From assembly GCA_037379345.1 (NCBI GenBank), contig CM074518.1:28024001-28088000 (forward strand): a stretch of 64,000 nt of DNA, given 5' to 3'. The notes under the pieces are model-generated. The model was not told the origin of the DNA and searched no databases. It was given only the letters and a program-made list of their open reading frames with translations. Positions 1 to 20,680 of this stretch are shown in pieces. Made by a program: the position numbers and the translations under genes. Position 1 is the first letter of the stretch; every line of letters begins with the position of its first letter. The DNA comes from Perna viridis. Lineage: Eukaryota.

Positions 1-1
1 A

Positions 2-806
2 AACAGTTATGCGACACTAACACCATTGCAGCCTCTGCCTCCTATTTCTACAGTGTCGGATAAATTTAACCAAATTCAGAGTACATGTGGAAATGGATTA
101 ACTTTGATGAACAATGGACTTGGTGCCGTAAATGTTATGGATATTAATACTATGAACACATACCGTTATGATACAAAAATGATGAGTATGAACCTTAGTC
201 CAGCCAGTATCCAGGGGCAGACAATGAACATGATGACAACAAATGGATACAACCAGGCTATGTCCCCTTATGGTTACAGTGTTAATGTCAGCGTAGGAGT
301 TAGTCAAAATGGACTACCGTCACCAAAATCAGAACATAGATCGCCAGTTTTATCACCTAACACATTAGCATCATATGACTCTTATCGCAATCTCGCTACA
401 CAACCAGCTCGTCTGCATTCCCCTAATCCAATGATGTCATCTGTGAATGGACTTCATGTTAGTTCTACCGTTACACCTGACGCATCCCCTCACAGTCATG
501 GAAGTAGTCCGCAACGTGAACGATCTCTTGGCCCTATGGACACTCAAAGCAATAACAAACAAGAACTTGAAGAAATTAATACTAAGGAATTAGCACAGAG
601 AATAAGCAGTGAATTAAAGCGATACAGCATACCACAAGCTGTATTTGCACAAAGAGTGCTGTGTCGAAGTCAAGGAACTTTAAGTGATCTACTGCGGAAC
701 CCTAAGCCATGGAGCAAACTGAAATCAGGAAGAGAAACATTCCGGAGGATGTGGAAATGGTTGCAGGAACCAGAATTCCAACGCATGTCGGCTCTAAGAC
801 TGGCAG
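2..806 (+). CDS. ONECUT: ONECUT/HNF6-class transcription factor, coding exon (5'-truncated by the window): TP box + CUT domain
   Basis: The frame from base 2 reads NSYATLTPLQPLPPISTVSDKF (ONECUT TP box), then the CUT domain EEINTKELAQRISSELKRYSIPQAVFAQRVLCRSQGTLSDLLRNPKPWSKLKSGRETFRRMWKWLQEPEFQRMSALRLA. Phase-1 donor CAG|GTAAC at 806/807. The ORF-track start at 26 is an internal TTG. Confidence 0.97.
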
Positions 807-3800
807 GTAACATTTGATCTTTTCACCCGTCCAGTGGAAAATTTTATTCTTGTTAAAATAGTAGTAATCTTTATGTTGTCCCTCCTAAAACGAAATTGTT
901 GTATATATTTTGCATTTTTTTTTATTTTCAGTTATTTGCTAATTTGTTTGCTTTGTTTTTGTTTTGATTTTCAGCCACGTGTAGATATTGTAGTGACACC
1001 ATAGTATATTGACTAAAAAGTATTGAACAGTCGAAAGTAGCTTTCATTGACAAAACCATTTCAGATATCAGAGCTGATAAATTGCATTGGCTTGTGTATA
1101 ATGCTATTGAATATTGACAAGTGAAGTTATTCTGCAATCAACAAAATTAAGATAAAAATATTTGATTTTGGTGTAAATCTTAAGTCTTTCAATTCATTAA
1201 AAATGAGACCAATATCTCCCCATTTCTTTTTTTTTTCATTAAATGAGCAGCTCAACCCCCATGGCACACTTGGCATATTTAATTTAATTGATATGTCATA
1301 TTCTCATTAAGGGAGATGTATTATTCATAACTCAATAGTAAATTTCCTTTGTCATACAGTAGCAGTGGCATACACATGTAATATCAGCTTTCCATTGTTC
1401 ACAGTCTATCTTGTTTGTGTTGACAAATGTGTTAATACTGCTATATTGACTTAATTAAGCTTGTGAGGTGGTCACCTGTCTGTTCTAACAAAAGATTAGG
1501 ACATATACAACATCTGTTTTTAATGTGGCTTGTGGCACCCTTTGTTAACTCTTCAAAGACCAAAATTTACCTGGAAATTTACCTGTAGTATTCTGTTCAC
1601 AGCTACATTTGTACTAGTTCTAACATAAAAATTTTAAAAGCCTCTTTAAATATTTAGAGATTTTAACAAGTTATTTTAATATGCAAAGCTGTAATTTATT
1701 TTTTGGTTTGAAATCTTCTTTTAAAGCCTTTATTGTGAGTCTTGAAAGGTTAAAGAAAATGTGACTGTGTACACAAATGCATTTAGTCCTTTTTGTCACA
1801 AAAGAGATATACATGAATTATTATACCTGTCCAAACATCATATTTGAACATTATGTTGAACTTTTCAGATAATGCCTTTCAAAATTCCTTTTAAAGGGAA
1901 ACTTAAAATCAGGAAAAACTAGAGTAATTAGGAGCTTTCACTGCAATTTACTTTAAATAACTTTCGGCATGTATTGTCATGATTAGATACTGCTTCTTTT
2001 CTTACATTTGAAAGGAAAGAAGTCAATGAGCACTTAGCAAACCATGTATGATTTCATATAAAATTTTCTATTTACCTTGCTTAAAATTTAGTCGAAAAAG
2101 TTAGGAGACAGGCATTTTTCCCTCGCTGACAATTTTACTGATAGGTACATGTACAGTAGTATTCATTGAAATCATGAAATTTCAGCTTTGTAATTTTATA
2201 CTATGGAAGTTTCTGATGCTTTGCTGACTGCTAAGCTTCAGTTGTTTCTTGATAGATACTAGTTACATGTAACTTCTCATTGAATCTTGTATTATCCTTT
2301 GAAGTAACTGATACAAAACTGAACATGTGTGGACAGTATGCATACTTTGAAACAGATTGATGAATAAAAATATATCTGTAAATACATTCAAAAACGTAGC
2401 CAGTAGTACATTTTTTTCAAAGCATGTAGACCTTTTTGTCATTTTAAAATTCAGTCCAATTCTAGATATAATAATGTAATTGCTAAAGGTCTTGGGCAAG
2501 CTAACCAAAAAAAAAGGAACACAACAGTTTTCAATCCAGAAGGTATCTATGGATTGCATGATTAATCTAAAATTTTGCATGGCTGCTTTCCTGTTAGAAT
2601 TGCTGTTTCCATGTAAATTTAGACAATCATCTTTGTACAATGTTCATTGTGTATAATATTTGACAATGTAACATTTTTTGTACAAATATAAATGTACATG
2701 AATGAAAAAGTACATACATGAGGCATGATAGTGAAGCAGTATTGTCTCCCTTGATGCCCTTAATGAAAAACTGTATAACAATGTCTGCATATTTGAGAGA
2801 AGATGTACATTGTGTCTATATATGCTTATTAAATGTAAATGTACATGAAAAATGCATGTTTAAAGGCAAAGCTGTATTATTTTCAATATGAAAATTGAAA
2901 TAGCTGCATGATCAGATTTCATATGTGGATACAAATGTATTTATATTAAATTTTAGATAATATTGTACAACATAGCAAATGTTTTATTACATGCATGACA
3001 AACGCATTTCACTCAAGTTTAGATTTTCATAAAAATTTATATAAAGAAAGCTACTTTTATCAATTTATCAAAAGATGATATATATGGACACAATCCTCAT
3101 ATTAATAATTGTAATTCCTTCTTGTTCTAACAGTGAATTGAGTCCATAGTTTTGACTTTAATCCCTCTCGTTATTTTGACGATGCCATATGGTGCTAACC
3201 AGTTGGCATTGTTTGTCCAGATATGTTTGTCACTCGGTGGCGAAGGAATTGTAATCTGACGTGGATTTGACTAGCCAATCTAATACCAACATTGTTCATG
3301 GCTTGGACGGAGATTTTTTCCGAAATATCATGTTCCATCTTTCAGCTTATCAAAGTTTTGTCATTCTATTTGTTTACTTTCTTTGTTGATAAATTGCAAT
3401 TTGTACACAAAATGTGACGATAGTCCACAGTTTTTGTTGCTTGAGTCATGTTGACAGTTATTATAAAACTTAAGCATATTAAAAATGAAATGAATTCCAT
3501 ATCAAAGAGGAACACAGTAAACAGATCACTCGGACTGCAGAGAAAAGCTCGATATGTAGGGGTATATCTAAGTTATAAACAAGAATTTTAATTTAAATGC
3601 CTTTAAATGGGCCTTCTTAAGATTTCTGTGTATATAAACACAAGCAATAGGTGGTAAATTACATTCATGTCAAAATTTAAAATTCCTAATCACAAAAATT
3701 ACTTGTCATCTTAAACAAAATATTTTCTTTCTAATGTGTCTGACTTTGAAACATGTTAGTACAGATTCAGAGAATATGATCAGTGTGTTGTGAACTTTTC

Positions 3801-4946
3801 TTAAAAGTTGATAACCATTTTTAAAATGTTCTATTCAGGAAGAAAATTAAATTTTAAAGATCTTGATAACTGATATGTAAACATGAAAATAATTCATTTG
3901 GGTACAAAGTCCATGAATTCAAGAAAAAGGAAAAGTAGAAATCAGAACATCAATGTTCTTAGATTCCACTTTCAGGTCTTGTAAAAATGTTCATGCACTT
4001 ACAATGTAGAATTATACCTGTATTCTGCATCAGTGTCATTTTAAGATGTACCGGTAAATGCATATTGTATAATTTTTACATGAGTGCATTTATAAATACA
4101 GGTACGAAATGAAATGTTCTTTTATCAGTTCATGTACATGTATGAATTTAATATGTCCTTTGGCTTTGTAATACATTTTGTTGTCTATTTAAATTTAAAA
4201 AAGAATGTACATGTAAGGGTTTAACTTAACCACTTAAATATACTAAAATGTCAGACTGTATTAGGAAACTATAATTATACATGTACAACATCAACAAATT
4301 TAGTGTAACAAGGCGTCGTCAACATCTGTTCCAATTTACATCTCCATCTGTTGTGTGAAAGTAATACATGTATGTGTTATATATGACTAAATACCTGTAT
4401 AATGATACTTGTATGATGTACATGTATGACATTCATATATTAGCACTGCCATGGTGGATTAACAATTGTTGCTAAGGAACTACAAGTATAAATTTAATTA
4501 AATTTTTAAATTCATAGATTATGCTCTACAGAATGTGCAGAAGTACATAAAATAACATGTTCATGTGTATGTACATTTGTACATGTATATTTTTATAATG
4601 TGATGACTGCATCCAAATTATTTCCATGTGATCAATGCCACACATTGACATCGTGGTGCTGAGCTATTGAAGTGCTTGCATTTTCTGTTTATTTTTCAGT
4701 TGAGATCCATTAATTGTCATTAAAATCAAGATATTTTTTAAGATATAATATTTTCTTTTAACTTAAGACCTTAGATTTTATGATTTCCCAAGACTTGACT
4801 TTATATGTGACAATTTTGCCCATAACTTATATGTCAGAAAATTTTCACAACACATTTTCTTTGCAGGGACTAGGCTAATTTTTCTTTTCTTTCATTCTTA
4901 TTTTCTGTCTTTTACTTTGATTTTTAATAGCTTTCTGTCTTTTCAG

Positions 4947-5003
4947 TTTTAGTTAGCTACAAGATCCTGAATCACCATCGACGGAAGTCGTTGATTGGTC
5001 AAG
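4947..5003 (+). CDS. ONECUT: Putative 57-nt cassette exon A in the ONECUT CUT-HD linker (VLVSYKILNHHRRKSLIGQ)
   Basis: A long pyrimidine tract (~4879-4944) follows a ctaat branch-like site and ends in CAG. The 57 nt are open in phase 1 and end at donor AAG|GTATTT. Confidence 0.55.
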
Positions 5004-5869
5004 GTATTTTACAAATTTACATTTCTAGGAATGGGAAGTAGTGTACCTTCAATACTACTAATCAACGACAAGTACTCCCGCCTGTGGCTTGCTCACTACT
5101 AATACTACAGTAAAACAAAAATATATATTCATTTTGTACCTTCTTCAATTGAAAACTGTTGTGTGATATTTGATAAAACAATGACTACAAAAGTGACATG
5201 TATTTTAGCTTAGCACAATGGCTGTTTTTTCCTTGTTCATTATTTTATTTTTGAAAGAAAAAAGCTGCATTCTGCATGGTTGAAAAAGTGCATGAAACTT
5301 AGGCATGTTGATTTTAGTTGATTAGAAAATAAGTAGGCTCTTTACTCCAGCACGACAGTTTATTGAACCATGCTACTTCATCTTTGCTTGTTACAATTAA
5401 TGCTATAATATAAATGTACTCACAGTAAATGGTAGATCTTTACAAAGAAGAAATATTATCTCAAACACCAAAGTAGGCATCTCATATATTTTCTAGGCCA
5501 TCTTGCTTCTGCAGTTATTCATATAAATATATATGACCAGGACCATAGCCAGATGATTAGGCTCTGCTGTGATATTTTCAATCAGAGTTTGTTTTTTCAG
5601 ACACGCCACTTAGAACACAAATTAGAATTGCCTGGCTAAGGCCCTGTCAACTTGGACTAGATAATCAAACTTTTATTACATTTTGTTTTCAGAAAAATAC
5701 CTTTTAAAAAAATATGAGCAGAATCTCTAAAATGTGAACATGTTTATTGATTGTACTGTAGATAAAATTGATGCTTGTCTTATTGCTAACCAAATGTAAA
5801 GAGGACATACTTGTCTAGAGATTGATGTAAGTCAAAGCTTTGTGCACATCTTTCTGCAATTTTCCTTGT

Positions 5870-5945
5870 TCATTGACCCATGGACATTTTTTCCACTTGG
5901 TAGGGTTGTTGTCTCTTTGACATTTTCTCCATATCCATCATTTTT
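5870..5945 (-). repeat. Short interspersed repeat fragment; related copy at ~23538-23590 (+)
   Basis: Shared core GATATGG.GAA.ATGT.AAAGAGACAACAAC.CTACC in opposite orientations. Confidence 0.55.
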
Positions 5946-8900
5946 ATATTCTATATGACCATTCACTCTCTTAAAGTTTTCAGTGTTGCTTAGATGGCCA
6001 GTGAAGATGTTCATTGCCTGTAGTCATTGTTTTAGGCAGGTGCTAAAAGCAGCATGTCCAGTTACTAATTCAGTTAGCGGTCTGCCATGTAAGCAGATAT
6101 TAGTTTTTTTCTCAAGGGCAAAAAGTCTAGAGGAACATGTTAATTTTAGAAATAGGTAAACACTACTTGAACTAAGTGGATCTTTCCAATTTAAGACGAC
6201 TCATGTAAGATAAGGTAAAGCACTTTATTCTTTAATCCGATCAATTCATTCAAAACAATTGTTGGTGATGCGACAAGCTATTTGTGATTTTGAAGCATAA
6301 TATCTCAATGACAGTTTAGGGAAGTGACAGTTTTGTTTTAGACTAAAGGAAGATTACTTTAAAAAATGTAGCATTTTTCATATGATAGCAAAAGTCCCTA
6401 TTGACACTCCTGAGATTTCTTTCATTTGTCAGAGAAAGTCATTTTATTTTCCATCACTCCCTAATGCTGCTCTTTTGCAAAAGACAGAATTCCTCATCGC
6501 TCGTATACAAAATCTTAGATCTTCAGTGGGGTTTCCATTAAAACCTATTGTTTAACAGGATGTGCTGTATGTTGCCACATTCTACATGCATTTTAAATGT
6601 TCAGTGCAAGGGGGTAAGATAGAATTTGAAAATCTTTGAAGTGTTATCACCTTGCAGAAAAATGAATTGTAAATTCTACCTGTAGTGATTTTATTTTATC
6701 TTTCATAAAATATGAATTATATGGGTTTTGCTGATGAAAAATTGAAAGATAAAGGTTACTTTCTCATTGAATTGAAGACTAAAAAATCGAGCAACAGGAA
6801 AATTCTGAAATTTATAAATTGCGTACAGGGTGAGAAAAACAAAGAATTACGAATTGTTTTGTGAACATAATTTTCAATAAATGTATTTACATAAGAATAT
6901 AGAGCAGGGATATTGAATCATAAAATTATTAACATTTTTAGGTTGATGAAATTTCCGCATCTGCATTTTCACTATAGATGTGGTCACCAAGCTCCCCTTA
7001 GTCCTCATGGAAACTGAAAATTTGCAGTCTCATAATATGAAAGGGTACATATATGAGCTATATCTACTTGTACATGTATGAGAAACGCTTTATTTGCCCT
7101 AACTGCAGGGGTTGGTGGAAATGAAAGTCATTTATACCGGGTTTGGTAAAAAATTCTTAGACAGGAGCTGCTTGCCAATGTACCTCAGAAAGTTTTTTGA
7201 CACTATTTATCTTATAATAGTAAATTCCTCAATTGACGCTTATCATATGTCCCCTTCAGTCCACTGTCAAGATATTTTCCCAGCAAGATACAACTTGACA
7301 TGTTTTTCAAGAGTTTTTAATATGAGAAAACCATAATCCAGACTGAATACATTCTTTGCTAGGCATTCCATGGAAGTGAAAGTTAAGAGACGATAACCCA
7401 TACATAGTGTCGTATCTCGTTCTTGTCAGATCAAAGTTATCTCTGTTCTGACAAGTCCTGGCTCTTCAATATGACTATTTTGTAAACTTAGGTGATTAGG
7501 TGTTTTTGGCCCACTAGTCGTCTACAGTGAGGATTCTCATACTCGATGGGGGTGGTCGGCAGTCTACACTACTAAATTATTAAACAGAAAGTATTTGATT
7601 GACAACAAGCTTATCTTGTACAAATTTTCATCATATTAATCCAAATAAATGGCTGGTTTTGATATACCCCCTTGTAAGGAACCTTGAGACTTATATGCTT
7701 TTACTAGGATTTGACTCCATAGTAAGATTTGTGAAACAGCAAATTTTAGGTGTCAGTATGACAGTGGCCAAGTCTGTTCTTGTTGATTTTTCACATTCTA
7801 TTGAATCCTAAGCAGTAGGTATAGGCTTTAGTAGAGGCTTCAAAATTCTGCATAGATGTCAACATGATAAATGTTTGAAATCTGGGTCCAACTCCACAAA
7901 ACATGAAAAGTTACTGAAGTTGATGAGAATATTCTTAACTGTTTGTGTTGTCATTCAATCCAAACACTTTTGAGTTACCAAGGAAGTTCTCAAATTTAGG
8001 TATTGGTTAATATTTGAGGTGTCTGGATCTGCATTTTGAACCTTGAAAATTTGTACCTTTGTAGTAATGTTAGAAAAAAACTTGAGTCTGCTTTTGCCCA
8101 GGAAACTAACTTGCTATGTACCAAATTTTGTATCATCCTAGTTTATTAATGGCTGTTTTTATTTCCATAGAACAGCTTGATCCATTTCATTACCTCCTGT
8201 CTATTTCTGTAACTCTTCTTCAGTAATTGGAAGTGGTTCGTCTCCAGTCTTGTTAAGTCTGCAAATTGTGACCTCTGGTTAAACGAAACATAGTTCAGCC
8301 ATTTTCTATGAATAAAACGATCCCTATCAATAGAACAAACTATAGTCCTTCAATTTCAATAGAAAATAATGATGCTTTTTGCTTCCAAAATGGAATTTTG
8401 CTGTACTCTGTAAAAAGATGAAGTTTAAACATAAATAGCTATGTTCGGTTGGTTTCAATTAAACATAGAATCCTACCCATTAAGTATTTGGCGTAAATAT
8501 TGGATTTCGTAAATGTCCCTTTGTAATGGTATTCACATCAAGACTACTCTTGTATGATGAAAGCTAAAACAATACACACAAGAAGATACTTGAAACCAGA
8601 AACGGTATTATTTCTTTGTTGGAAGTTAAACAAATTGTCGTTGAAAACAGTTGTATTCCTAGCATTCCAAATTTAGTGGCTTAAGCAGGACTGTGTACAT
8701 ATGTTGGAAGTCATCTAAGACATATGTATACAAAATAATGTATTTTATACCCTAAAAAATAAATTATATTCTCTCTTAAATCTCCCAAAATCTTGAGTCC
8801 TTTATCCAAACTCAAAGAAGACTTGCTCGTGATTTGATTCAGTGGATTATTTTTACCCATATATTCCTTTTTTTTTTTCATTTTCTAAATGTGAAATCTA

Positions 8901-10980
8901 GTGACCTAGAAAACTGAACATATTTGGCTGTTCAATTAGGTTTTAACAGATTTAGAGTCTAGTTAATTGTACTTATTTGACCAATTCAATAAGGTTTGTT
9001 GTAAAATCTCTTTGACTTTTCTTTTCTTTTGATGTACTTAGGAGTATTTAAAAAAAAAACAGTATTGAGAGTGAGCAAGAGGCCATGAAATTGAATAGTT
9101 AGTTTACCAACGATTCTAAATTTGCTGATTCTTTTCTTTCTTTGTGAGATAGTGAATAGACCAGATTTTCCCTTTTAATTCAGAAAATAACAGCTTGTGT
9201 TACTATCTATGAATTTCCTACCATGATTAAAAGTCAGCTTTCTACAGTCGGGTTATTGTCTGCTGTTCATACAAGATTTTTTTTTTGTGTGTTTAGTAAC
9301 ACACAATATTCTATGATTCATCCCTTCACCTTTTACAGAAAAAAAGAAAGGCATGAAGATTTAATGATACACAAATGAAGCCTGCTCTCCCCATGTGAAA
9401 AAATACTATTAACCATGGTCATTATATTGATTTTTGCCGAATGCACCAATCAAGACTTAAACTGGAAATTGTTCCGTGGAAGGAAATACTCTGGCAGAGA
9501 TAGACACGCTTGATAAAGCACTAACACAAGTATCATTTTGTATGAATATAATTTTTCCATTTATTTGGATCTGTCATTTAGATCCACAGTTGCCATGGCG
9601 AGAAAGCAGCTTTAGTTGTTAACCTGTAGAAAATGTTTCTCTCCAATCCAACATTCTGCACACCTGGATTCCGGTACGATGTCTGAATTACACACCAACA
9701 CATTATCTCATTTACCTTTCATGACTAATAACAGAACACGGGTGTTTTACTTCGTTGATGATGAAAAAAATAATCCTTGTAGGGCCTTCATCCATTATTC
9801 ATCCCTTTCTGAATAAAACTATTTATACCTCGCATAGCTGTATGAAGATTTCAAAACAATGGCAAATCGTGGGCTTTGGAATCTTGAGTACAGAATGATT
9901 TAATTTCCAACTCGCAATCTAGTTAGGAACTGTCAGCATTAAAAATGAAAACTATTTTTTACAATTGAATGGCATCGAGAACAAAGACGAAAGGATTGTA
10001 ATTGTCATTAACCCAAACAGGATGTTGTTTGACATGACAATAACTTCTAAAGATGATCTGGTGCATGAAAATTTTAAGGATGAAATCCTGAATATTCCAA
10101 GCCTCAATGATTATGAATTTGTATAGACTAATACATAAAATTAATGGAAGAAAATAAAATGATTAACTCAGATCTACCATTAATTCTGTGACACATATCT
10201 TATGTTTTATATCATATACATATATTTGATATATTTTATATGTAGATATGCACTGCACATATGGACAAAATTTATCTTGTTTCCAGGTGCAATGTGATGT
10301 CCTATTTGTATACATGTATATTTTGTTCATGCATATTTATGATTTTCTTTTTCATTTTCAACTCTGCTTGTTTTTTTTGCTTTTCCAGTATGTTTTTGTA
10401 GAACATTTTGATTGGTTCTTTCTTTCAGGAAATTGGACAACCTTGATAGGAACTTTACTAACAAACTGGTAGTTTCTTTTCAAATTCATTTAAAAGGCAT
10501 TGTGCTTTTCTGTTCAAGTCCAAGTGTTAAAGGATGACCCCTGTTGGCTAAGTCTTATAAGAGCTGTCCATAGGAATTAAAAGTACATTTTAATGTAGGT
10601 TATTATATTTCAAAATAAAATTATATAAGATGGCTTTGTTAAAGTAAAATTAGTTATTATTGGCTGTTTTCTGAATATAACAATGCCAGATTTACTTGTA
10701 GTACCTGTCAAGGTTGTGTCACTAAATGACAGTTTTAAATATTTTGTATTCTTCAGTTCATCTGTATTTTTATCTCTGTTGAGAGTACCAATGTAGCATG
10801 CATCTGAGAAACATAACGAAGCCTTTTATTTCAGATTCAGAAGTGCTCAGTTTGTGTACTGGTTACTGTACTTCTGGCTCACCTATGCTTAACGAAGTAC
10901 ACCAGTAGTAACTGTGACATTATTTGTCAAAAATTTATTTGTCGATAGCTTTATATAAATATTCCCTTTTCTCTCTGTAG

Positions 10981-11037
10981 GCAAAACGTTCGGTGAAGTG
11001 TCGATAAAAAAGGAAGAAGGTGGTTTTGGCACAATAG
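10981..11037 (+). CDS. ONECUT: Putative 57-nt cassette exon B in the ONECUT CUT-HD linker (GKTFGEVSIKKEEGGFGTI)
   Basis: Acceptor ttcccttttctctctgtAG, then a purine-rich 57 nt open in phase 1, donor TAG|GTAGGC. TGCATG lies at 11077. Confidence 0.65.
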
Positions 11038-14000
11038 GTAGGCATATACAATGTTGTCAGAATATCTGTTGTTTCCTGCATGTCTTACTTTGTTCTGAAA
11101 AATAGGGGGTTGGGGAAAATGCAACATTTTCAGTGTAAGTTAATTGAAAATTGTCTCCCTTTCTTCCCTTAAATTCATTTATTTCTTTTTACATGATGTA
11201 TTACGACCCTTCTATTTTCATTTTAAAATGCAATGACATGCACAAATAAGTGAATTTTGCTGTGGAATTAAGTTTTCAATGGCTTACGGCCTACTGTCAC
11301 TAACGACAAAAGGTTTTATAAACCTTGTTCACAATGGGCTGATTTAGATCAGGGGTAACATCTGCCATTCTGCAACTCAAACAAATATAACCATAACCAG
11401 TCCCTTTGCATGCTTTTGTCGTCAGAGTTGACAATCATCTCTCCTGGTATATGTGAATGTGTAAGGGAAATTTTATACTTTAATATCCTATGAACCATAT
11501 GTGTATATAATTTTACACCAGATGCATGCTAAATGACAACATTCTTGTATTTTATGTTCAAAGTTTGACGTAGATCTGTTCCTCAGTATTTAGGTTTTTT
11601 TTATACATTAGATGATTAATTTGAGAAATCTTTCAAATATTATTGTTTTTATTCTTAGTAGATTTCCTAACACCTGCTGTATTATAAAAATGTTTTCATA
11701 CTTTTAGAGACATGTGTATGATAGAATCTTTCTCATTTAAAATTTATGAAATTAAATTAAAAATTGATGTTCTGACATAGTTTAAGAGTCTTCCCTAAAT
11801 AAATGATTCTTTGCTATTAATGACATATTGGAAGTTCTATTTTAATGGTGAAAATGTTATTTTATGAAATTTGGACTTCAAAATTAAATTACATGTACTA
11901 TGTATTTAGTTTGTATCAAGGGAATTAGAAGTATTTACTTTGTGACATTAATGACATAATATCTGCCTTCGGGTGTCCATTACACCACATGGTCAGTTAA
12001 TTGTTTACAAAGGAGGAAACGACCATATAAATTATTCAAATGCAATTTATTCCTTTATATCGCCCTGGCATAGTAGGCACACTACTGAATAGGTAATGAA
12101 CTCCGTTCTTTTGTCTGCCTTGAAGAGAGGTGAAATTTCATTTAAGACAAACCACTCGATAATGATGGGAACAAATCCTGTGTTCCGATTGTATTTTCGC
12201 ACCGCTAGATGTGTATAAAAAATTTCGCAAACATTGAATATCAAATTCATTCTCCACTGTGAATACAAAAGAGAAATATTGCATGTTTCTGGTCCTATCT
12301 AAATAACATTTCTCTTATTGAAACTCCTGTGTTTACATTTGTTGAACAATTACAAATGAGAAAATTTGTTTGGCTTGGGAGTTTAAAAATTTAATATTGT
12401 CCAGGTAGAGAGAAGTATAAGGAAAGTTTTATCAACAAGGAAAATCCGTATTTAGAAATTTGGGACAAATTTCAATGCAGAGCGATTTATTCAAGAATTT
12501 GTTTGCTCATGACCTAGCGTGACCTTGTTTTGCATGCGAGTAGGGTTCGTGTTGTCATACACACTTCTAACTATCTTGAGTTGCACTTCTTGTGCGACTT
12601 GAGCATCCTTAACTGATAAGGGAATTGTATACATATTTGGTTCATTTAGTTTGTTTAGGTTATTAACTATTGCAATATTGTCACAATTTAATAGGACTTA
12701 AAATGCATGTTTTGATTAATTTGGGCAATAGGGAATTAAGTTGTAACTAGGCTGTCACTTCTGTTTTTAAAATTAAGACCTCCATGTTTAGAAAAAGAGC
12801 TAAGAGTGTGGTCGAAATTTTACTTCAATTTCAATTGCTTTTCTCTTTGTCTGATGGTATGATATAAAATGGATTTCAGTTAATCCTCAAAATTAGTACA
12901 TACTTGGAATTTGTATAAAATACTAGTAAAGCATCTTCAACCTTGTTCTCTGTTTAGATCCAAATTCTGCTCAGTCCTTGAGATCAAACTGTATGTAACA
13001 TGGACAGCAAATATTTCACTTTTAAAATGAGCATGCTTGCTATATTTAGAGTAATTATGTAGCTGTCTTTGTAAGAATCATGCAAAATCTGAAAAATGTG
13101 ATACACCCCAAACAAGGCTACATATCTTTATTTTTGTAATTAAGTTGTTTTATGGGTCTATACTATGAAATGTGTAATTATTCATTCAAATCTGCCTGTT
13201 CTTAGGAGATAATCAACATTGAAAATTCAATAGATTCTATTGCATTTAAGTGTCATTTACAGAGTTATCCTCCTTTATTTTGAAATATACAGTGCATTCT
13301 ATACAATTTTTATCTCCTAAGAACACAGGTTATATGAGAAATTGAATGTTTATTTCTGTTTACTACAATTCAAACAAAATATCAAAAATCAAAATATGTA
13401 GGCTTTTAACCCATGAATCACATTTTGCATGATTCTTAGCTGGAGTGCTACATTGATCAAATTACCCATTTAATAAGCTACAAAAAGGATTGTTTACACT
13501 GAAATGAAGGCAGATTTTGTATGTATTTCATATGGGCAGAGATGCAATCATACTTCAAGTTACAAGTACATGTTAGAAACATGTTTACTGATAAATGGTT
13601 ATATTTCTGATATTTTTTTCAAGGAAACCTTTTCCTTTTAAACAAAAGATATAATCATATATCATCTCCAAACTTGATGGTTTTTTTTTCCCAAATGTTG
13701 GGTTGACTGGTTACCAAACTCAACAACAAGACTGGAGGAAAAAGTAAACCAGTTTTAAGTAATTCCATGTTTGTAAACATCAGAGAACATGTGTCAAAGC
13801 GTATTAAGCTTTAATGATTTATTGATTCCCTCGTAATTCTTTAATAGTTGAAGGTTATTGTGAACTCCTACCAAAAAAACGATAAATCCATAAATTGCCA
13901 ATGTTAAAATAAACATAGGTTATTGCGGAATAAATGGTATTTTCATATTGAAATATTTGCATGGAACCCTGAGAAAGGAGTTCAGCTGTAGTATTCACAC

Positions 14001-15798
14001 GTTCTAATGTTATTTGAGTGTGCTCTGCTAACAAGCCTGGCACCAAGACATAATGAATATTTGCTTTCCTCTGCGGTGAAGCACTCGTAATCTCACTGTG
14101 GATGGAATTTTAAGATAAAATGATTTGACCTTTTAATTTAGTACTTTATGGTCCTATATTTAATCTGTTTCTGTTCATTTGGCCAGTTCTATCATTTGAA
14201 CTAAATATTTTTATAGAATATGTAATATCAACTAGTATGAGGAACCTTTGTTTAAAATTGTCCAGACTTCTGAATATGTGAATTCTATCAAGTAATAGGA
14301 ACTGAGGTTATGTAAACAATTCTAGAAGCTTCTTAAATTTTGATGTATTTAACAATTTAACAAAAGGCTAGATTTCCCCACTTCTAAGTGAACATCAAAT
14401 TTTTTTTCTCAACATGTTCATGAATTGTCATGATACCCTAACTCCTCAGATATTAGGTTTAATCATTCTTGAGTACTTAAGCTTTAGCTGTCCTTTAGAA
14501 CGACAATTTATCTTGTAAAGATCTGTCAATATCTAATTCACATGTATGAAATATTACTACCCTAGCTATAATATTCCTGCCATTCACATTTGTGTGTGTA
14601 GTTAGCACATCTTCTGATAAGCTGTGAGGAAGGCTACACATGACAAAGAATGTTCAAAGGTCACTTTCAATATTTTATCTCATTCTTTCTCATGTAGAAT
14701 TAAATGATACATATATATTAGGTATATACATGTTTATATTTGTGTGATAATTATGCATGGTTTTTAAGTATAAAATTTCACAAAATTGTTTTTAAAGAAA
14801 AAGTTCTCATTAATGAAAATAAGGAAACTTGAGTCTGCTCTAAGATATCTGTTGGAAATGTAAATAACATGGAAATGATGGCAGTCCATTGTTAACCGTC
14901 ATGCCTCGCCAATTCATCATATTAGCGTAGAAAGTTGAGAATCGTCATGTCTCTTGGGGAAATCAAGTTGTCTACTCCACTTTCGTTGTCAGTCTCTGCG
15001 GACACGTCTTTCCATATTAGTTTTCTTTGTTAAATACCATGGCAACAAGACCCGAAGCTAAGGTACAACCTCGGCTTGAATTATTAAATTGCAAACGATG
15101 TCCTACATGAAGAAATTTTTCTTTACCATGCCATGCAGAAGTTACATTGTTAGAGAGTGTCTTTGTTCGGGGAAATACAAGTGTCTACGTGGTATTTTTA
15201 TCAATATATTTAATTACGTTTAAACCATTTGTTTATACAATCTTCATGTAGTAAAGTGTATGCTACTGAATATTTTGCCTGGCCTTACTTGTCAAGATTT
15301 TTATCAACTTCGAAAAATTAATTTTCAAACATCATATTTATAAGGAGATAAAAGAATGGATTGCATAATATTTCTAACATAAACTTTAACATGAATTCCT
15401 CCATAAAAGAACATATTTTTGGAACTATATGTCTAAATCATGCAGTAATGTCTATCATTCTCCTTGTGTGTTCTTTGAAAAAAAAGTTAATATGCTCACT
15501 ACCAGTATTTAAAACTTGTAGAACTTCAACGTTTGGAGGAATGGATGAGAGGTCATTGAAGCAGAGATCACTTAAAGGGGGTTATAGAGAACTTAATCCG
15601 TTTATTTTTTAAATTGCCCTAAATTTATCATTTTAGGAGAAATGTTGACAAAAAATTCAAAGATGTAATCATTCCACCTATATATTATCAAATTGAGAGA
15701 GTCTTACTTCTTATGACACGGACTGAATACGAGCTTTATCTAGTATCCAGTATCGTCAGATTGTTTCATATTGTAAGTTGTGTTTTTATTTTTTTCAG

Positions 15799-16073
15799 CA
15801 TGCAAAAGAAAAGAACAGGAAATGTCTCCTCAAGAGAACAGAGCTCCAAAAAAACCTCGTTTAGTGTTCACAGACATTCAGAGGAGAACATTACATGCAA
15901 TTTTTAAGGAAACAAAAAGACCTTCTAAAGAAATGCAAGCTACTATTGCCCAACAACTCGGGTTAGAAGTCACGACAGTGGCAAACTTTTTCATGAATGC
16001 ACGCCGGCGATCTATAGACAAATGGCGTGATGACAATGGAAATGACAATCGGGAAGGGGTGATCAAGAGCTGA
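15799..16073 (+). CDS. ONECUT: ONECUT terminal coding exon: linker + atypical homeodomain
   Basis: The acceptor ttttttcAG|CA joins the upstream G to give ..RLAACKRKEQE.., then PKKPRLVFTDIQRRTLHAIFKETKRPSKEMQATIAQQLGLEVTTVANFFMNARRRSIDKW with the ONECUT F48/M50 signature. TGA at 16071-16073. Confidence 0.97.
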
Positions 16074-19000
16074 GTTGTCCTATTTTCTGACCTTAGCAAT
16101 ATTTCTACTTTGAGTATACCTGACTAGTTAAATGTTGTGTGGAGATTGGTTATATATGTGTATGATTTCCATGAAGCAATGTAGAAGTAGAAAAAAAGAA
16201 GTTCGTCCATTTTTTTTATGTGCAAATATATTTGTATCTTCTTGCTAATGCAGAACAGTGACAGCATTACCAAGGAAGAAGACCCATTGTACTATGAAAG
16301 CATAATTAGGCTAATGTGCATTGTCTCAACTTGCTGAGAAGAGAGTTCGACACTAGTCTTGCTAACTGAAGACATTATCAGTGATGCATGTCGATAATAT
16401 GTTAACAGACTTGCGCTGCAGTGGTATAGGACGTGGTTTAATATAAACTGGTTTTGTCTAATGTAGACAAATAGCTGAAGTAGATTTTTTGCTAGTAGAA
16501 TGGTGGTGTTTCCATATATTACGACCTTATTGTCTCATTTTTCCTTGTTAGCGAAAAACCATTATTGTGCGATGGTGCAAACATTGTTTAGTTTCATTCC
16601 TAGTGTTAATGTTTTATCAACATTCCATTTGATTTCTATGTATCTGTTTGAGGACAGAATGAGACCAGGATTTGATTTGAGAACATTCCAAATTCTAGAT
16701 TTAAAGAAAATGGCTCACACAATCTGGTTAAAAATTAGTTTATTTTCAAAATATGGTATTCGAATTTGAGCAATTGATTACAAAATTTGTTAAATTTTTG
16801 GAGTGTTGATTCAAATTTTAGGTTGTATTTTAGACAGTATGTACTATCAAATCTACAATGTATATTTTTGTCAGTAATCTCTATAAATTTGATTTTTTTT
16901 TTAAATTGTTAAGATAGCTTGAATAGTAGTAATGTATCAACAGAATCTCAAAATCATATAAGAGATTTTAAGAGTATGTAACAACTAAGTCTAATATTAC
17001 ATTTTGGTATCTGGTTTCAAAATAATGTCTTTACATTAGTCAAAGGAATTAGTTTTACTGAATGGAGTTGATCATTTTGACATCTTTGGATCTGACTTCT
17101 CTTTTTTAAGCTTTTGGCAGAAAAACAATCATATTTTTCATCCTCATTTGTGTTTGCCATGACATATCAGGTAGCTAGGTAGTAAGTTTCATTGTGTTCA
17201 TATAAACAATTTGGTTGTTCTGATCTAGTCGTAGCTTGTCTCGTAGGATTTCAGAAAAAAAAAACTTTGCCACAGGTTTCTGTGTTGTGTGTGTTTGGTC
17301 ATACAATCACTGTGTTTTATTGTGCAATATTTATTGATTTTTGTAATGGATTTTAGGTGATTATTTTGTTAATTATTATTTATTACATTTGTTGATTAAT
17401 TTATTTGTTTAATGATGGACATTCATTTGATGATTTTTTTGGGTGATTGTCATTATTGATCCAGATGCAAAACATTCCACTGACTCAGAATCTGTTCAAA
17501 GTATCCATGTCATTAAGATGCTTTAATATGGCTTCTGTAGTTAGAAAGATTTAGATCTGACATGCTTAAGAGAACAAAATGGCAAAACCCAAAAGCTTTA
17601 GCTTACTAGACTTAGTGGCAGCATATTTTGTTGTAAAATAATTTCCTGTCTTGGTTTGACGAATACACCAACAACAGACAATGAAACTTGTTCAGTGCAT
17701 TAAAAACTAGGGCACTTTGTGTCTAAAATAAATGGGTTGTAATGCGGTTTTGCCCTAGCATTGACCTAACAATCATATGCTTTGCATGCTTGTTAAAATC
17801 TTGAATGAAATCCAAATTTTTTTTAGGTTTTTCTATTTACTTTCTGCAGAGAATGAAATTCCCAATCACTTACTGTAATCTACAAACATGATCTATTAAT
17901 ATCTTTTTGCTCATTTTACACTTAATTCCTTTTATCCCCATTTACTTGGCTTTTTAAGAAATCCATTGATATACATTTTTTTCCAATATTTTGTTATCTT
18001 TTTATATAGATTTTGCCCTTTTTACAAGACTGCCAACTTTTCTTTATTTCTTTTTTTCTGTGTTATGGATAACCAACAATTATATTGTACTGCTTTAGAT
18101 CATTTTTTACTACAATTTAAATTTGAAACATCAGCAAGTTAGCTGTAAATTAAATTAAATTTCAGAATTACCCAGTTTTATTCATTATGATATTAAGAAT
18201 CTCAATCCAAATTACACAAGTTTTATGCTTTCAGTAGAAAGGCAAAGACAGCCATTTTGTGTCATGTGACAAAATATGTACCTTTTTATTTCATACATGT
18301 ACTGATAGTATGGACAGGTAAATGTAGTTATGGTTGTATCTGGTGGTCTGGAAAGCTTCATAATTTAACTGTTGGTTGTCTATTTGTTGATGTTGGTGTA
18401 AGAATTTGTGTTTATTTATTAATTTATTAAATGTTGTGTTTTGAAAAAACATAACGTGTAAATTTTCTGTGTATCATATAAGAATTTGTACATGTCTGAA
18501 CAAATTGTCCTCTGTTGCATGAGGCATGCAATAAAAGACGTATTTAAAAGTTTTTAGAGAGGTGTATAGACAAATTTTCATCATCCTTGTACATACATAT
18601 GGGTCATTTCATAGTCAGTCTATGGGTTCTTGACATGTACATGTAAATACAATGCCTTTTTATGACCGATCAGGAATTTTTGTCCCCCTATGAAGTACCT
18701 CACTCTGAGAACAGATAAAACATATTTGCATGGTCATTTTCTGTTTTTTAGATATTTTTATAGATAGATGTTTTTGGAACAAGGTGTTGTAATTAAGGTA
18801 TTATTGGTTTTTATGCATTTTACAAGTAACTTTTTTTCTATTTTATGGAAAACACAAGATCTGAAATGATTTCTCACTAGAATCTCAATAAGTAGGTTAT
18901 GGCTTAACTAGTTAATTCGTACACAATAACTTACCAATCTTATTTCCCTGGGGGAATTCTTCAGTAGAGAATTCTATATTCAGATAGTGCTTCATATTTC

Positions 19001-20680
19001 TTTTTATGTGTGTAATGTTGTAAATAAGAATAATTGAAACATTGAATTCAGTCTGGCCAATTTGAAGTCACCAGTAACTTCCCTGTATTATTTTGAATAG
19101 AAATTCTATACTTGTTTAGCTATGGTTAAAGTGAAGGCCCCTCCCTTTAAAGTTCTTTTCAATGAATTGTAAAAAAAAAAAATCAGGAAATCGTATGAAT
19201 TATTTGGAAGGAAAAATTAATGATCTTGAAAATTAAGTTAACTTGATTGAATTTTCAACATTAAGAATAAAAGAATGATTTCATACATCATTTAAAATAG
19301 AATGAGTTACATTCATTGCATAGTCTTATGATTTGAGCCAAGGTTGATGGCTTGTCAATGGTATTGTTAAGTAATTTTAGATAGAAACATGTTGCTGCCA
19401 AACAAATACCTTATAACATTTTCTTTAGAAGTTATGTGCTGTAACAGTTTGTTGAAGGATTATTTGCAAGTTAATTTCCATGGTAACGATGTCATGTGAT
19501 GGGAAATTGAACAGCTGTTTCCCCTTATGTAGGCTTTAATGTTTTATCACCAAATAAAACGAAAATTTGCTGTAAACATTCATATTTGCAGAATTTAACT
19601 TTGGATTCTGCTTTTGCTTCTATTGTTAGGAATTCTGTTTTGACATTTTGAAGGATGGATATCATGTATAATTTTATTCTTTTTCATCAAAAGAAAAATT
19701 CATCTAACTAGAGCCAGTTGATAAGAATTATATTGATTCATTTAAGAAGTCAAAGTTTTGTCATTATTTCATCTTTTTATGCCTTCAAGTAGAACTTCTA
19801 GTGGCACTTTAACCATATCAAGCTTGTACTGTAGATAGGCTTGGGACATTCCGTTCACGCAGTTTTTGCAAAAATAATGGCAGAAAAGAGCATTTGTGAA
19901 GAAATCATCCAGTATCACAAAGATTATAATTGCCACTATTGTTGCAAAAACTAATTTGTTCAGGGACCATACTGTGTATTTTCCTTATAAAGTATTGCCA
20001 TAGAAACCTAGTCACATGATAAAAACAGTCCCATTCATCAGTTGTCATGTGACCTTCCTGTCGCATGGTATAGCCATGTGAACAAGTCATGTGGTTTTGT
20101 CATTTATGATCAACTTATTTATTGTGCAATATACATACTTGTGTGTTGTGGTGCATATACAGTGTTAAAAATTGTACAAGTTATGTGTTTTCATTCATTG
20201 TCATTTTATGCATTACATTTTTACAGTTATTTATTTTTTAAATTACATTTTCATGGACTTTGTTTCTTCAACCTCATAGATTTCATTTTTCCATTGGTGT
20301 CGATTCTTCTGAAAATGAAATTGAACAAGAATCATGACTTTTGGTTGAATTTTAAGTCTTTGAACAGGAAAAGGGAATTTTAGTACATTTTTATTCTTTC
20401 CCTTTCCAATATTTTAGCTCTGAACAAAAGGGGCTTTTGTATTACATGTTTTTGTATTCTTGCATTTAAAGGACTGCATCTGTTATGATGTACAGAGGGA
20501 TCAACAAAATACAACAGTAGATAGTTGGTTTTTATGTGTCTATTTTTAGATGTGTGAAGCTGTTGTTTCACACTCTTAATTTTTTAGTATGTGTGAATCC
20601 GAAAGTTCACACTTATGCAAATCTTGGAAACATAACTTGTACTGATTATGAACAATAAATAGTCACCAAGCTATTGAAAA
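16074..20680 (+). other. Probable long ONECUT 3'UTR with alternative poly(A) signals
   Basis: U/GU-rich, CpG-poor sequence after the stop. AATAAA at 18530-18535 and 20654-20659; composition changes after ~21 kb. Confidence 0.45.

What the first reader, a model, noticed from the sequence alone, without database searches (positions are those of the whole stretch)
4947..11037. Hidden modular ONECUT linker: two 57-nt frame-preserving cassette exons between CUT and homeodomain
Seen: the 15-kb phase-1 intron separating CUT from the homeodomain holds two segments of exactly 57 nt (4947-5003 and 10981-11037). Each has a strong pyrimidine tract/AG and a GT donor, starts and ends in phase 1, and has no stop. 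Skipping both, A only, B only or A+B all stay in frame. A encodes VLVSYKILNHHRRKSLIGQ (basic, RRxS PKA-type site); B encodes GKTFGEVSIKKEEGGFGTI (IKKE, a psi-K-x-E SUMO consensus). Known: mammalian HNF-6beta carries a spliced insertion in this same linker that alters DNA binding. Inference: an independently evolved splicing switch (cassette or mutually exclusive) that changes linker length and installs either a phospho- or a SUMO-control site. Both exons are too short for the ORF track.
Basis: partly seen in the sequence, partly recalled or inferred. Interest (0 to 1): 0.85.

Follow-up and report, generated by a model that had tools for sequence, protein, structure and literature searches.

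The report
One real ONECUT spacer exon, one chance

Summary
The sequence facts are all correct. The CUT exon ends at 806 and the homeodomain (HD) exon starts at 15799, both in phase 1. A (4947-5003) and B (10981-11037) are each 57 nt, AG/GT-flanked and open in phase 1.

B is a genuine coding exon.
- Four stranded RNA-seq runs of this organism give 52 junction reads for 11037>15799.
- mRNA contigs of a congener splice CUT|B|HD at exactly the predicted borders.
- The M. californianus copy matches 56 of 57 bases and differs otherwise only by an in-frame 6-nt insertion.
- Orthologous peptides sit at this position in mussels, oysters, a pearl oyster, scallops and probably an ark clam. G-K-x-F-x-E-x-x-I-K-x-E is invariant in the 14 aligned sequences.
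- Mytilus and Crassostrea RefSeq models exist with and without the exon.
- In this species inclusion predominates. Skipping was neither shown nor excluded.

A is not supported.
- Its splice-site scores are ordinary. Control DNA gives 1-6 equally good open candidates per 15 kb strand.
- It lies in a conserved non-coding block.
- Its homologues in two other mytilids are 61 and 72 nt long, with stops in all three frames.
- No protein model or assembled transcript seen here contains it.

Spacer exons in this intron are already known from rat and skate and are annotated in many lophotrochozoans. This is a new member of a known kind.

The parts
1..806 (+). 3' part of the large coding exon of the ONECUT gene (N-terminal region and CUT domain). 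The window starts inside this exon. It ends ...SALRLA plus one base (phase 1), with the GT donor at 807.
   Evidence: Open frame from base 2 to 805. 100% match to P0001, and 74-91% identity to bivalve ONECUT proteins carrying Pfam CUT PF02376. The congener mRNA contig L002 aligns to window 2-810 at 95%.
807..10980 (+). Intron between the CUT exon and exon B (10,174 nt, phase 1). It holds several blocks alignable with M. californianus at 72-79% identity.
   Evidence: The congener mRNA jumps from about window 806 to 10981. blastn blocks against L004 and L005.
4947..5003 (+). Segment A: an AG..GT-flanked stretch of 57 nt, open in phase 1 in this genome. Judged not to be a coding exon.
   Evidence: Ordinary site scores. 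Chance expectation is 1-6 such candidates per 15 kb strand. Homologues are 61 nt (M. californianus) and 72 nt (third mytilid), with stops in all three frames. Absent from all protein models and transcript contigs seen.
4902..5167 (.). Conserved non-coding block that contains A. It is single copy in this genome. Its flanks are more conserved than the interior of A.
   Evidence: Aligns at 79% to L004:7626-7881 and at 75% to L005:14598-14863. Only one match in the own genome.
10981..11037 (+). Exon B: a real 57-nt, phase 1-1 spacer exon. It adds 19 residues (GKTFGEVSIKKEEGGFGTI) to the CUT-HD linker.
   Evidence: Joint 11037>15799 (GT..AG) in 10, 16, 13 and 13 reads of four RNA runs, all on the strand expected for a + strand RNA. 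The congener mRNA aligns to 10979-11037 at 98%. 56 of 57 bases are identical in M. californianus, which also has an in-frame 6-nt insertion. Orthologous peptides across Pteriomorphia.
11038..15798 (+). Intron between exon B and the HD exon (4,761 nt, phase 1).
   Evidence: Reads skip 4761 bases with GT..AG ends.
15799..16076 (+). Coding part of the last exon: rest of the linker (ACKRKEQE...), homeodomain, and stop codon at 16074-16076. The 3' UTR continues beyond it.
   Evidence: Translation. RNA depth of 5-50 on one strand only. The congener mRNA aligns from 15797 on to window 19071.

Best explanation
The window holds the 3' half of the single-CUT ONECUT homeobox gene of a mytilid mussel. The gene has three coding exons here, not two: the CUT exon (to 806), a 57-nt spacer exon B (10981-11037) and the HD exon (from 15799).

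Shown: B is spliced in. It is the main form in the four RNA-seq runs examined. It roughly doubles the linker between the domains, from 18 to 37 residues between SALRL and KKPRLVF.

Inferred: the linker is a flexible tether. It is predicted to be disordered here and is unseen in the ONECUT2-DNA crystal. A longer tether should change how the CUT domain and homeodomain cooperate on DNA, as reported for the rat and skate spacer isoforms. The invariant core G-K-x-F-x-E-x-x-I-K-x-E suggests a sequence-specific role as well. A lysine modification such as SUMOylation at I-K-x-E is one candidate.

Inferred from relatives only: B is probably skipped in some cells. Mytilus and Crassostrea RefSeq models lack it in isoform X2. 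I put this at about 65% for this species.

Segment A is not an exon. It is a chance open AG..GT stretch inside a conserved intronic non-coding element.
For: B:
- 52 junction reads 11037>15799 in four runs from two studies, all on one strand.
- The junction counts (10, 16, 13, 13) are close to the depth at the 5' end of the HD exon, about 10, 22, 16 and 27 from bin 15700-15899.
- Congener mRNA contigs L002 and L003 splice CUT|B|HD at the predicted borders. Their protein P0253 carries exactly the B peptide.
- The exon is far better conserved than its flanks, and the only length change is an in-frame indel.
- Orthologues occur in Mytilus (5 species), two further mytilid groups, Crassostrea/Magallana, Ostrea, Pinctada and four scallop genera, with a likely one in Tegillarca.
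- X1/X2 isoform pairs with and without B exist in M. californianus, M. galloprovincialis, M. edulis and C. virginica.
- B's splice-site scores are unique among controls.

Linker:
- No secondary structure and pLDDT below 50 over residues 378-420 of P0253; B is residues 386-404.
- The ONECUT2 linker is disordered in the crystal, and covalent linkage of the domains gives 7 nM against 1380 nM (PMC11490551).

A:
- Ordinary site scores and a chance expectation of 1-6 candidates per 15 kb strand.
- Homologues of 61 and 72 nt with stops in all frames.
- No isoform or contig contains it.
Against: - Skipping of B was not observed in this species. The loose-end table was filled by a repeat, so reads joining CUT directly to HD could not be counted.
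- The CUT>B junction (806>10981) lay outside the stretch laid. For this species it rests on the congener mRNA.
- A was never tested with RNA reads. Its AG, pyrimidine tract and GT are conserved in all three mytilids, so rare or non-coding use cannot be excluded.
- The X2 models of relatives are RefSeq predictions that I did not verify with reads.
- The splice-site matrix was written from memory and serves only for ranking.
- SUMOylation is a motif inference only.
Confidence: 0.85

Rival explanations
1. One reading: both A and B are regulated coding cassettes (independent or mutually exclusive), giving +0, +57 and +114 nt isoforms with a phospho-site or a SUMO-site.
For: In this genome A is open in phase 1, frame-preserving and flanked by AG and GT. 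Its acceptor-like tract and its GT are conserved in three mytilids.
Against: The homologues of A in M. californianus and a third mytilid are 61 and 72 nt long with stops in every frame, so the coding capacity is not conserved. The interior of A is the least conserved part of the block. No isoform model or assembled transcript has it. B>HD junction reads account for most of the depth at the HD acceptor. Control DNA yields 1-6 equally good candidates per 15 kb strand.
Confidence: 0.05
2. B is a constitutive exon in this species. It is simply a third coding exon that the reader's two-exon model missed, and there is no splicing switch.
For: B>HD junction counts match the depth at the HD exon start in three of the four runs. 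The only assembled mRNAs of the congener include B. Scallop models all include B.
Against: RefSeq has B-less X2 isoforms in three Mytilus species and in C. virginica. In run X24 the junction count (13) is about half the depth estimate (27). Four runs of unknown tissue cannot exclude cell-type-specific skipping.
Confidence: 0.3
3. A is used as a non-coding or 'poison' exon, or as a splicing decoy. That would explain why its splice-like signals are conserved while its frame is not.
For: AG, pyrimidine tract and GTATT are invariant in three mytilids while the interior carries non-3n indels. Inclusion would bring a premature stop in the two other species.
Against: The invariant stretches of this block extend about 160 nt beyond the donor-like site, so the splice-like signals are not singled out. 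The intron has many similar conserved blocks. No transcript evidence was seen.
Confidence: 0.07

Closest known systems
Mytilus ONECUT isoforms X1 and X2 (e.g. M. californianus XP_052065468.1 / XP_052065469.1), and the matching X1/X2 pair of Crassostrea virginica
   Same: Orthologous gene, same phase-1 intron position (RLA | A-CKRKEQ), and an orthologous spacer exon. The peptide is identical over 18 residues in Mytilus. X1 has the exon and X2 lacks it.
   Different: The window's exon is 6 nt (2 residues, S-L) shorter than in Mytilus (63 nt), and it is the shortest version seen. Oyster, pearl-oyster and scallop versions are 26-28 residues. Skipping is not yet shown in this species.
Rat liver HNF-6beta spacer. 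I recall from memory a 26-residue spliced insertion between CUT and HD that alters DNA binding. The skate preprint cites the rat liver isoform.
   Same: An alternatively spliced short exon in the intron between the CUT exon and the HD exon that lengthens the linker.
   Different: Vertebrate Onecut1 versus the single lophotrochozoan ONECUT. I did not compare the sequences, so homology is untested and, for such short exons, probably undecidable.
Little skate Onecut1 spacer exon (144 nt, 48 residues; bioRxiv 10.1101/2025.07.30.667746)
   Same: [quoted passage not shown] It is predicted to be disordered. Both isoforms are expressed, and their ratio changes with developmental stage.
   Different: The skate exon is longer and is conserved within batoids. 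It has been shown functionally to activate a reporter. Nothing functional is known for the bivalve exon.
Linker cassettes annotated in other lophotrochozoan ONECUT genes (chiton, gastropods, cephalopods, heterodont bivalves, nemerteans, brachiopod)
   Same: In-frame insertions at exactly the same intron position, often several per gene. Biomphalaria has two that occur singly and together.
   Different: Their peptides showed no significant similarity to the window's intron. Only the pteriomorph bivalve versions are recognisably orthologous to B.

Membership tests
ONECUT class homeobox gene | One CUT domain followed by a divergent homeodomain | tested here: met
   The exon 1 translation matches ONECUT proteins with Pfam PF02376. 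The HD exon translation matches proteins with PF00046/PF05920. The congener protein P0253 has both domains.
ONECUT class homeobox gene | Conserved phase-1 intron between ...SALRLA and A-CKRKEQ | tested here: met
   Donor at 807, acceptor before 15799, split codon g|ca. The same break point is seen in the isoforms of many species.
Coding exon (segment B) | Junction reads or mRNA joining it to both neighbouring exons | tested here: met
   B>HD: 52 reads in 4 runs of this organism. CUT>B and B>HD: congener mRNA contigs L002 and L003.
Coding exon (segment B) | Frame and peptide conserved in related genomes, better than the flanks | tested here: met
   56 of 57 bases identical, with an in-frame 6-nt indel, against M. 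californianus. Peptide alignment of 14 pteriomorph sequences.
Cassette (alternatively skipped) exon (segment B) | Transcripts that skip the exon coexist with transcripts that include it | tested here: inconclusive
   Isoform models with and without the exon exist in three Mytilus species and in C. virginica. In this organism, skipping reads could not be read because the loose ends at 15799 were not listed.
Coding cassette exon (segment A) | Frame and open reading conserved in related genomes | tested here: not met
   Homologues of 61 nt and 72 nt with stops in all three frames.
Coding cassette exon (segment A) | Junction reads or mRNA containing it | not tested
No assembled transcript or protein model contains A.
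SUMO consensus site (psi-K-x-E) | Hydrophobic-K-x-E motif present and conserved | tested here: met
   IKKE or IKEE in all 14 aligned pteriomorph sequences; I, K and E are invariant.
SUMO consensus site (psi-K-x-E) | The lysine is actually SUMOylated | not testable with these tools
   Needs a biochemical assay.
HNF-6beta-type spacer isoform | Homology of the inserted peptide to the vertebrate spacer | not tested
   No vertebrate spacer-containing isoform was among the proteins retrieved.

The most novel reading that the evidence does not exclude
The phase-1 intron between CUT and homeodomain is a hot spot for spacer exons across bilaterians. In pteriomorph bivalves the spacer has carried an invariant G-K-x-F-x-E-x-x-I-K-x-E core since mussels, oysters, scallops and probably ark clams diverged. 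That core acts as a spliced-in SUMO (or other lysine-directed) control site, so one ONECUT gene gives a regulatable and a non-regulatable transcription factor.
Probability: 0.2. Interest if true: 0.5.

Novelty: new member of a known kind. Interest (0 to 1): 0.3.

Why it matters
For annotation, the ONECUT gene of this mussel has a 57-nt third coding exon that ORF-based tracks miss, and the main protein is 19 residues longer than a two-exon model gives. [quoted passage not shown] It also shows that in pteriomorph bivalves this exon is old and has an invariant lysine-containing core. That gives a concrete, testable handle (isoforms with and without the exon, lysine mutant) on how linker length and modification tune a two-domain transcription factor. 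My three literature searches found no paper on mollusc ONECUT spacer exons, although RefSeq models of relatives already contain them.

Tried and rejected
- tblastn of the linker cassettes of chiton, gastropods, cephalopods, a nemertean and a brachiopod, and of oyster CUT-only tails, against the intron gave only chance-level hits.
- tblastn of the alternative terminal exons that follow B in oyster and scallop HD-less isoforms gave no hit at E <= 1 in the window's intron.
- Rfam scan of the intron gave only two sub-threshold hits (mir-2002-like at 4547-4596, E 0.2; azaaromatic riboswitch, E 0.3). I take both as chance.
There is no support for a selected structure.
- Own-genome search shows that the A block and the B region are each single copy, so neither belongs to a repeat family.
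- The third protein search, with the HD exon, was meant to find transcript fragments showing what lies upstream of the HD exon. It returned mostly genomic ORFs reading in from the intron, with nothing on A or on skipping.
- Runs X1-X20 (Logan contigs) were not used. The only proteins of this species from Logan read through the donor into the intron, so those runs look like DNA.
- I never built or searched a joined CUT+B+HD sequence from the window. The exons were searched apart by reference. The natural congener protein P0253 was used for the alignment and the fold.
Full report
**1. The observation**

The window opens inside a long coding exon. Its frame runs from base 2 to 805 and ends ...EPEFQRMSALRLA plus one base, followed by GTAACA. 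At 15799, after a T-rich tract and CAG, the frame resumes as A-CKRKEQE... It continues through a homeodomain to a stop at 16074-16076.

The intron 807-15798 is 14,992 nt long and phase 1. Segments A (4947-5003) and B (10981-11037) are each 57 nt. Each is preceded by AG and followed by GT. The description is accurate.

**2. Is it more than chance?**

I ranked all AG and GT sites of the intron with a simple consensus matrix. I wrote the matrix from memory, so it is good for ranking only.

| Segment | Acceptor rank | Donor rank |
|---|---|---|
| B | 1 of 757 | 5 of 879 |
| A | 28 of 757 | 83 of 879 |

At A's own scores the intron holds five frame-preserving, open AG..GT candidates. The reverse strand of the intron holds six. 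Four other 15-kb control strands of the window hold 2, 1, 2 and 4.

At B's scores no control strand and none of 30 dinucleotide shuffles gave an in-frame open candidate. So A is what genomic DNA offers by chance, and B is exceptional.

**3. B is a real exon**

- *Protein models in relatives.* Searching exon 1 by reference found bivalve ONECUT proteins. The best named hits were oysters at 74-76% and an unnamed mytilid group at 91%. A second search found full-length models whose linker, at exactly the intron position, carries B or its orthologue. Mytilus californianus X1 differs from B only by two extra residues. Pinctada, scallops and oysters have 26-28-residue versions.
- *Isoform pairs.* Cluster look-ups showed X1 with the exon and X2 without it in M. 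californianus, M. galloprovincialis, M. edulis and Crassostrea virginica.
- *Congener mRNA.* The 495-residue protein P0253 comes from transcript contigs of a close relative. Those contigs are 95% identical to the window in exon 1 and 82% in the 3' UTR. P0253 has precisely the B peptide. Its contigs L002 and L003 align to window 2-810, 10979-11037 and 15797 onward, so they are spliced CUT|B|HD at the predicted borders.
- *Genomic conservation.* In the M. californianus locus (L004) the exon matches 56 of 57 bases and has an in-frame 6-nt insertion. The flanks are clearly less conserved.
- *RNA reads of this organism.* Four raw stranded RNA-seq runs from two studies were laid on 10900-16899. All show the joint 11037>15799 with GT..AG ends, in 10, 16, 13 and 13 reads from 7-14 start points. 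All reads lie on the strand expected for a + strand RNA.

**4. How often is B included?**

The junction counts are close to the depth at the first 100 bases of the HD exon. I computed that depth from the bin 15700-15899 as roughly 10, 22, 16 and 27. Inclusion is therefore the main form in these samples.

Reads joining CUT directly to HD would appear as loose ends at 15799. That table was filled by a repeat at 13053-13451, and the relevant rows were not shown. Skipping in this species is therefore neither shown nor excluded. By analogy with Mytilus and Crassostrea models I consider it likely (about 65%).

**5. A is not supported**

A lies in a roughly 270-nt block (4902-5167). The block aligns with M. 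californianus at 79% and with a third mytilid (genomic contig L005) at 75%.

In the three-way alignment the AG, its pyrimidine tract and the GT are invariant. So are long stretches further downstream. The interior of A is the least conserved part and carries indels that are not multiples of three.

The homologues are 61 nt and 72 nt long and have stops in all three frames, including phase 1. None of the Mytilus, oyster or scallop isoform models, and none of the assembled transcripts, contains an A-like peptide.

The block is single copy in this genome and matches no Rfam family.

The most economical reading is a conserved intronic non-coding element in a developmental gene, in which an AG..GT stretch happens to be open in this species. 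I could not lay RNA reads on A. Only one read-laying run of 6,000 letters was available, and A and B are 6,091 nt apart end to end. A rare or non-coding use of A remains possible (about 10% in all).

**6. What B does**

Between SALRL and KKPRLVF the canonical linker has 18-19 residues in most ONECUT proteins retrieved. B raises it to 37.

In an AlphaFold2 model of P0253, built on a 22-sequence alignment, residues 378-420 (B is 386-404) have pLDDT below 50 and no secondary structure. The homeodomain is confident.

In the ONECUT2-DNA crystal the linker is invisible. The covalent link between the domains is what gives nanomolar binding: 7 nM against 1380 nM for the separate domains (PMC11490551).

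A spacer exon at the same place is known in two vertebrates. One is in rat liver, cited in the skate preprint; from memory it is 26 residues and alters DNA binding. The other is in the little skate. There it is 144 nt, is enriched in the embryo, and both isoforms activate a reporter (bioRxiv 10.1101/2025.07.30.667746).

The inferred mechanism is therefore a flexible tether whose length, set by splicing, changes how the two domains cooperate on DNA. Beyond length, the bivalve exon has an invariant core G-K-x-F-x-E-x-x-I-K-x-E, and further on F-G and a final I, in all 14 aligned pteriomorph sequences. That is a motif-level inference only.

**7. Comparison and novelty**

In-frame cassettes at this intron are annotated in a chiton, gastropods, cephalopods, heterodont bivalves, nemerteans and a brachiopod, often several per gene. 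Only the pteriomorph ones are recognisably orthologous to B.

Three literature searches found no paper on mollusc ONECUT spacer exons. The exon is nevertheless already in RefSeq models of relatives, and the principle is published for vertebrates. I class this as a new member of a known kind, of modest interest.

**8. Limits**

- The splice-site matrix is from memory.
- The X2 models of relatives are predictions that I did not verify.
- The CUT>B junction of this species rests on the congener mRNA.
- Skipping of B and any use of A remain to be read from RNA data.
The exons were searched apart by reference.

Noticed in passing
window 13053-13451: A roughly 400-nt element inside the second intron collects about 150-220x RNA depth on both strands in all four runs. 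It shows many variant letters and hundreds of loose ends at both borders. It looks like a dispersed, transcribed repeat family whose reads come from many copies.
   Followed up: no
window 3102-3767, 6717-6971, 7292-7673, 8173-8599, 9386-10067, 11407-11562, 13768-14096, 14930-15237: Besides the A block, roughly a third of the ONECUT intron aligns with M. californianus at 72-79% identity. Several of the blocks before 8400 (as far as the locus fetched reaches) also align with the third mytilid. They are candidate conserved non-coding elements of a developmental gene.
   Followed up: partly
proteins P0257, P0261, P0273-P0275, P0005, P0008, P0256 (oysters, scallops): Oyster and scallop models include homeodomain-less isoforms. 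In one kind, the spacer exon is followed by an alternative terminal exon. In another, an oyster CUT-only form diverges after ...SALRL. No counterpart of these tails was found in the window's intron.
   Followed up: partly
window 16077-19071: The 3' UTR of the gene is long. The congener mRNA contig L002 aligns in pieces out to window 19071 at 75-82% identity.
   Followed up: partly
window 16142, 16210, 16335: 16142 reads A instead of G in nearly all RNA reads of all four runs (81 of 82). Run X21 alone shows a 1-nt deletion at 16210 and a GAG insertion at 16335, along with several single-letter variants. These are ordinary differences between individuals in the 3' UTR.
   Followed up: no
window 11100-11499: Low RNA depth (0.65-2.65) just downstream of exon B in runs X22 and X23 only. 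It could be unspliced precursor or an unrecognised minor exon.
   Followed up: no
It is conserved in M. californianus, partly broken in the third mytilid, and shows no covariation.
   Followed up: partly
protein P0292 (Tegillarca granosa): This ark-clam model starts with a B-like peptide (G-K-T-I-G-E-V-T-V-K-K-E-D) followed by about 45 further linker residues before A-CKRKEQ. This suggests the spacer exon predates the split of Arcida and that this lineage has extra cassettes.
   Followed up: no
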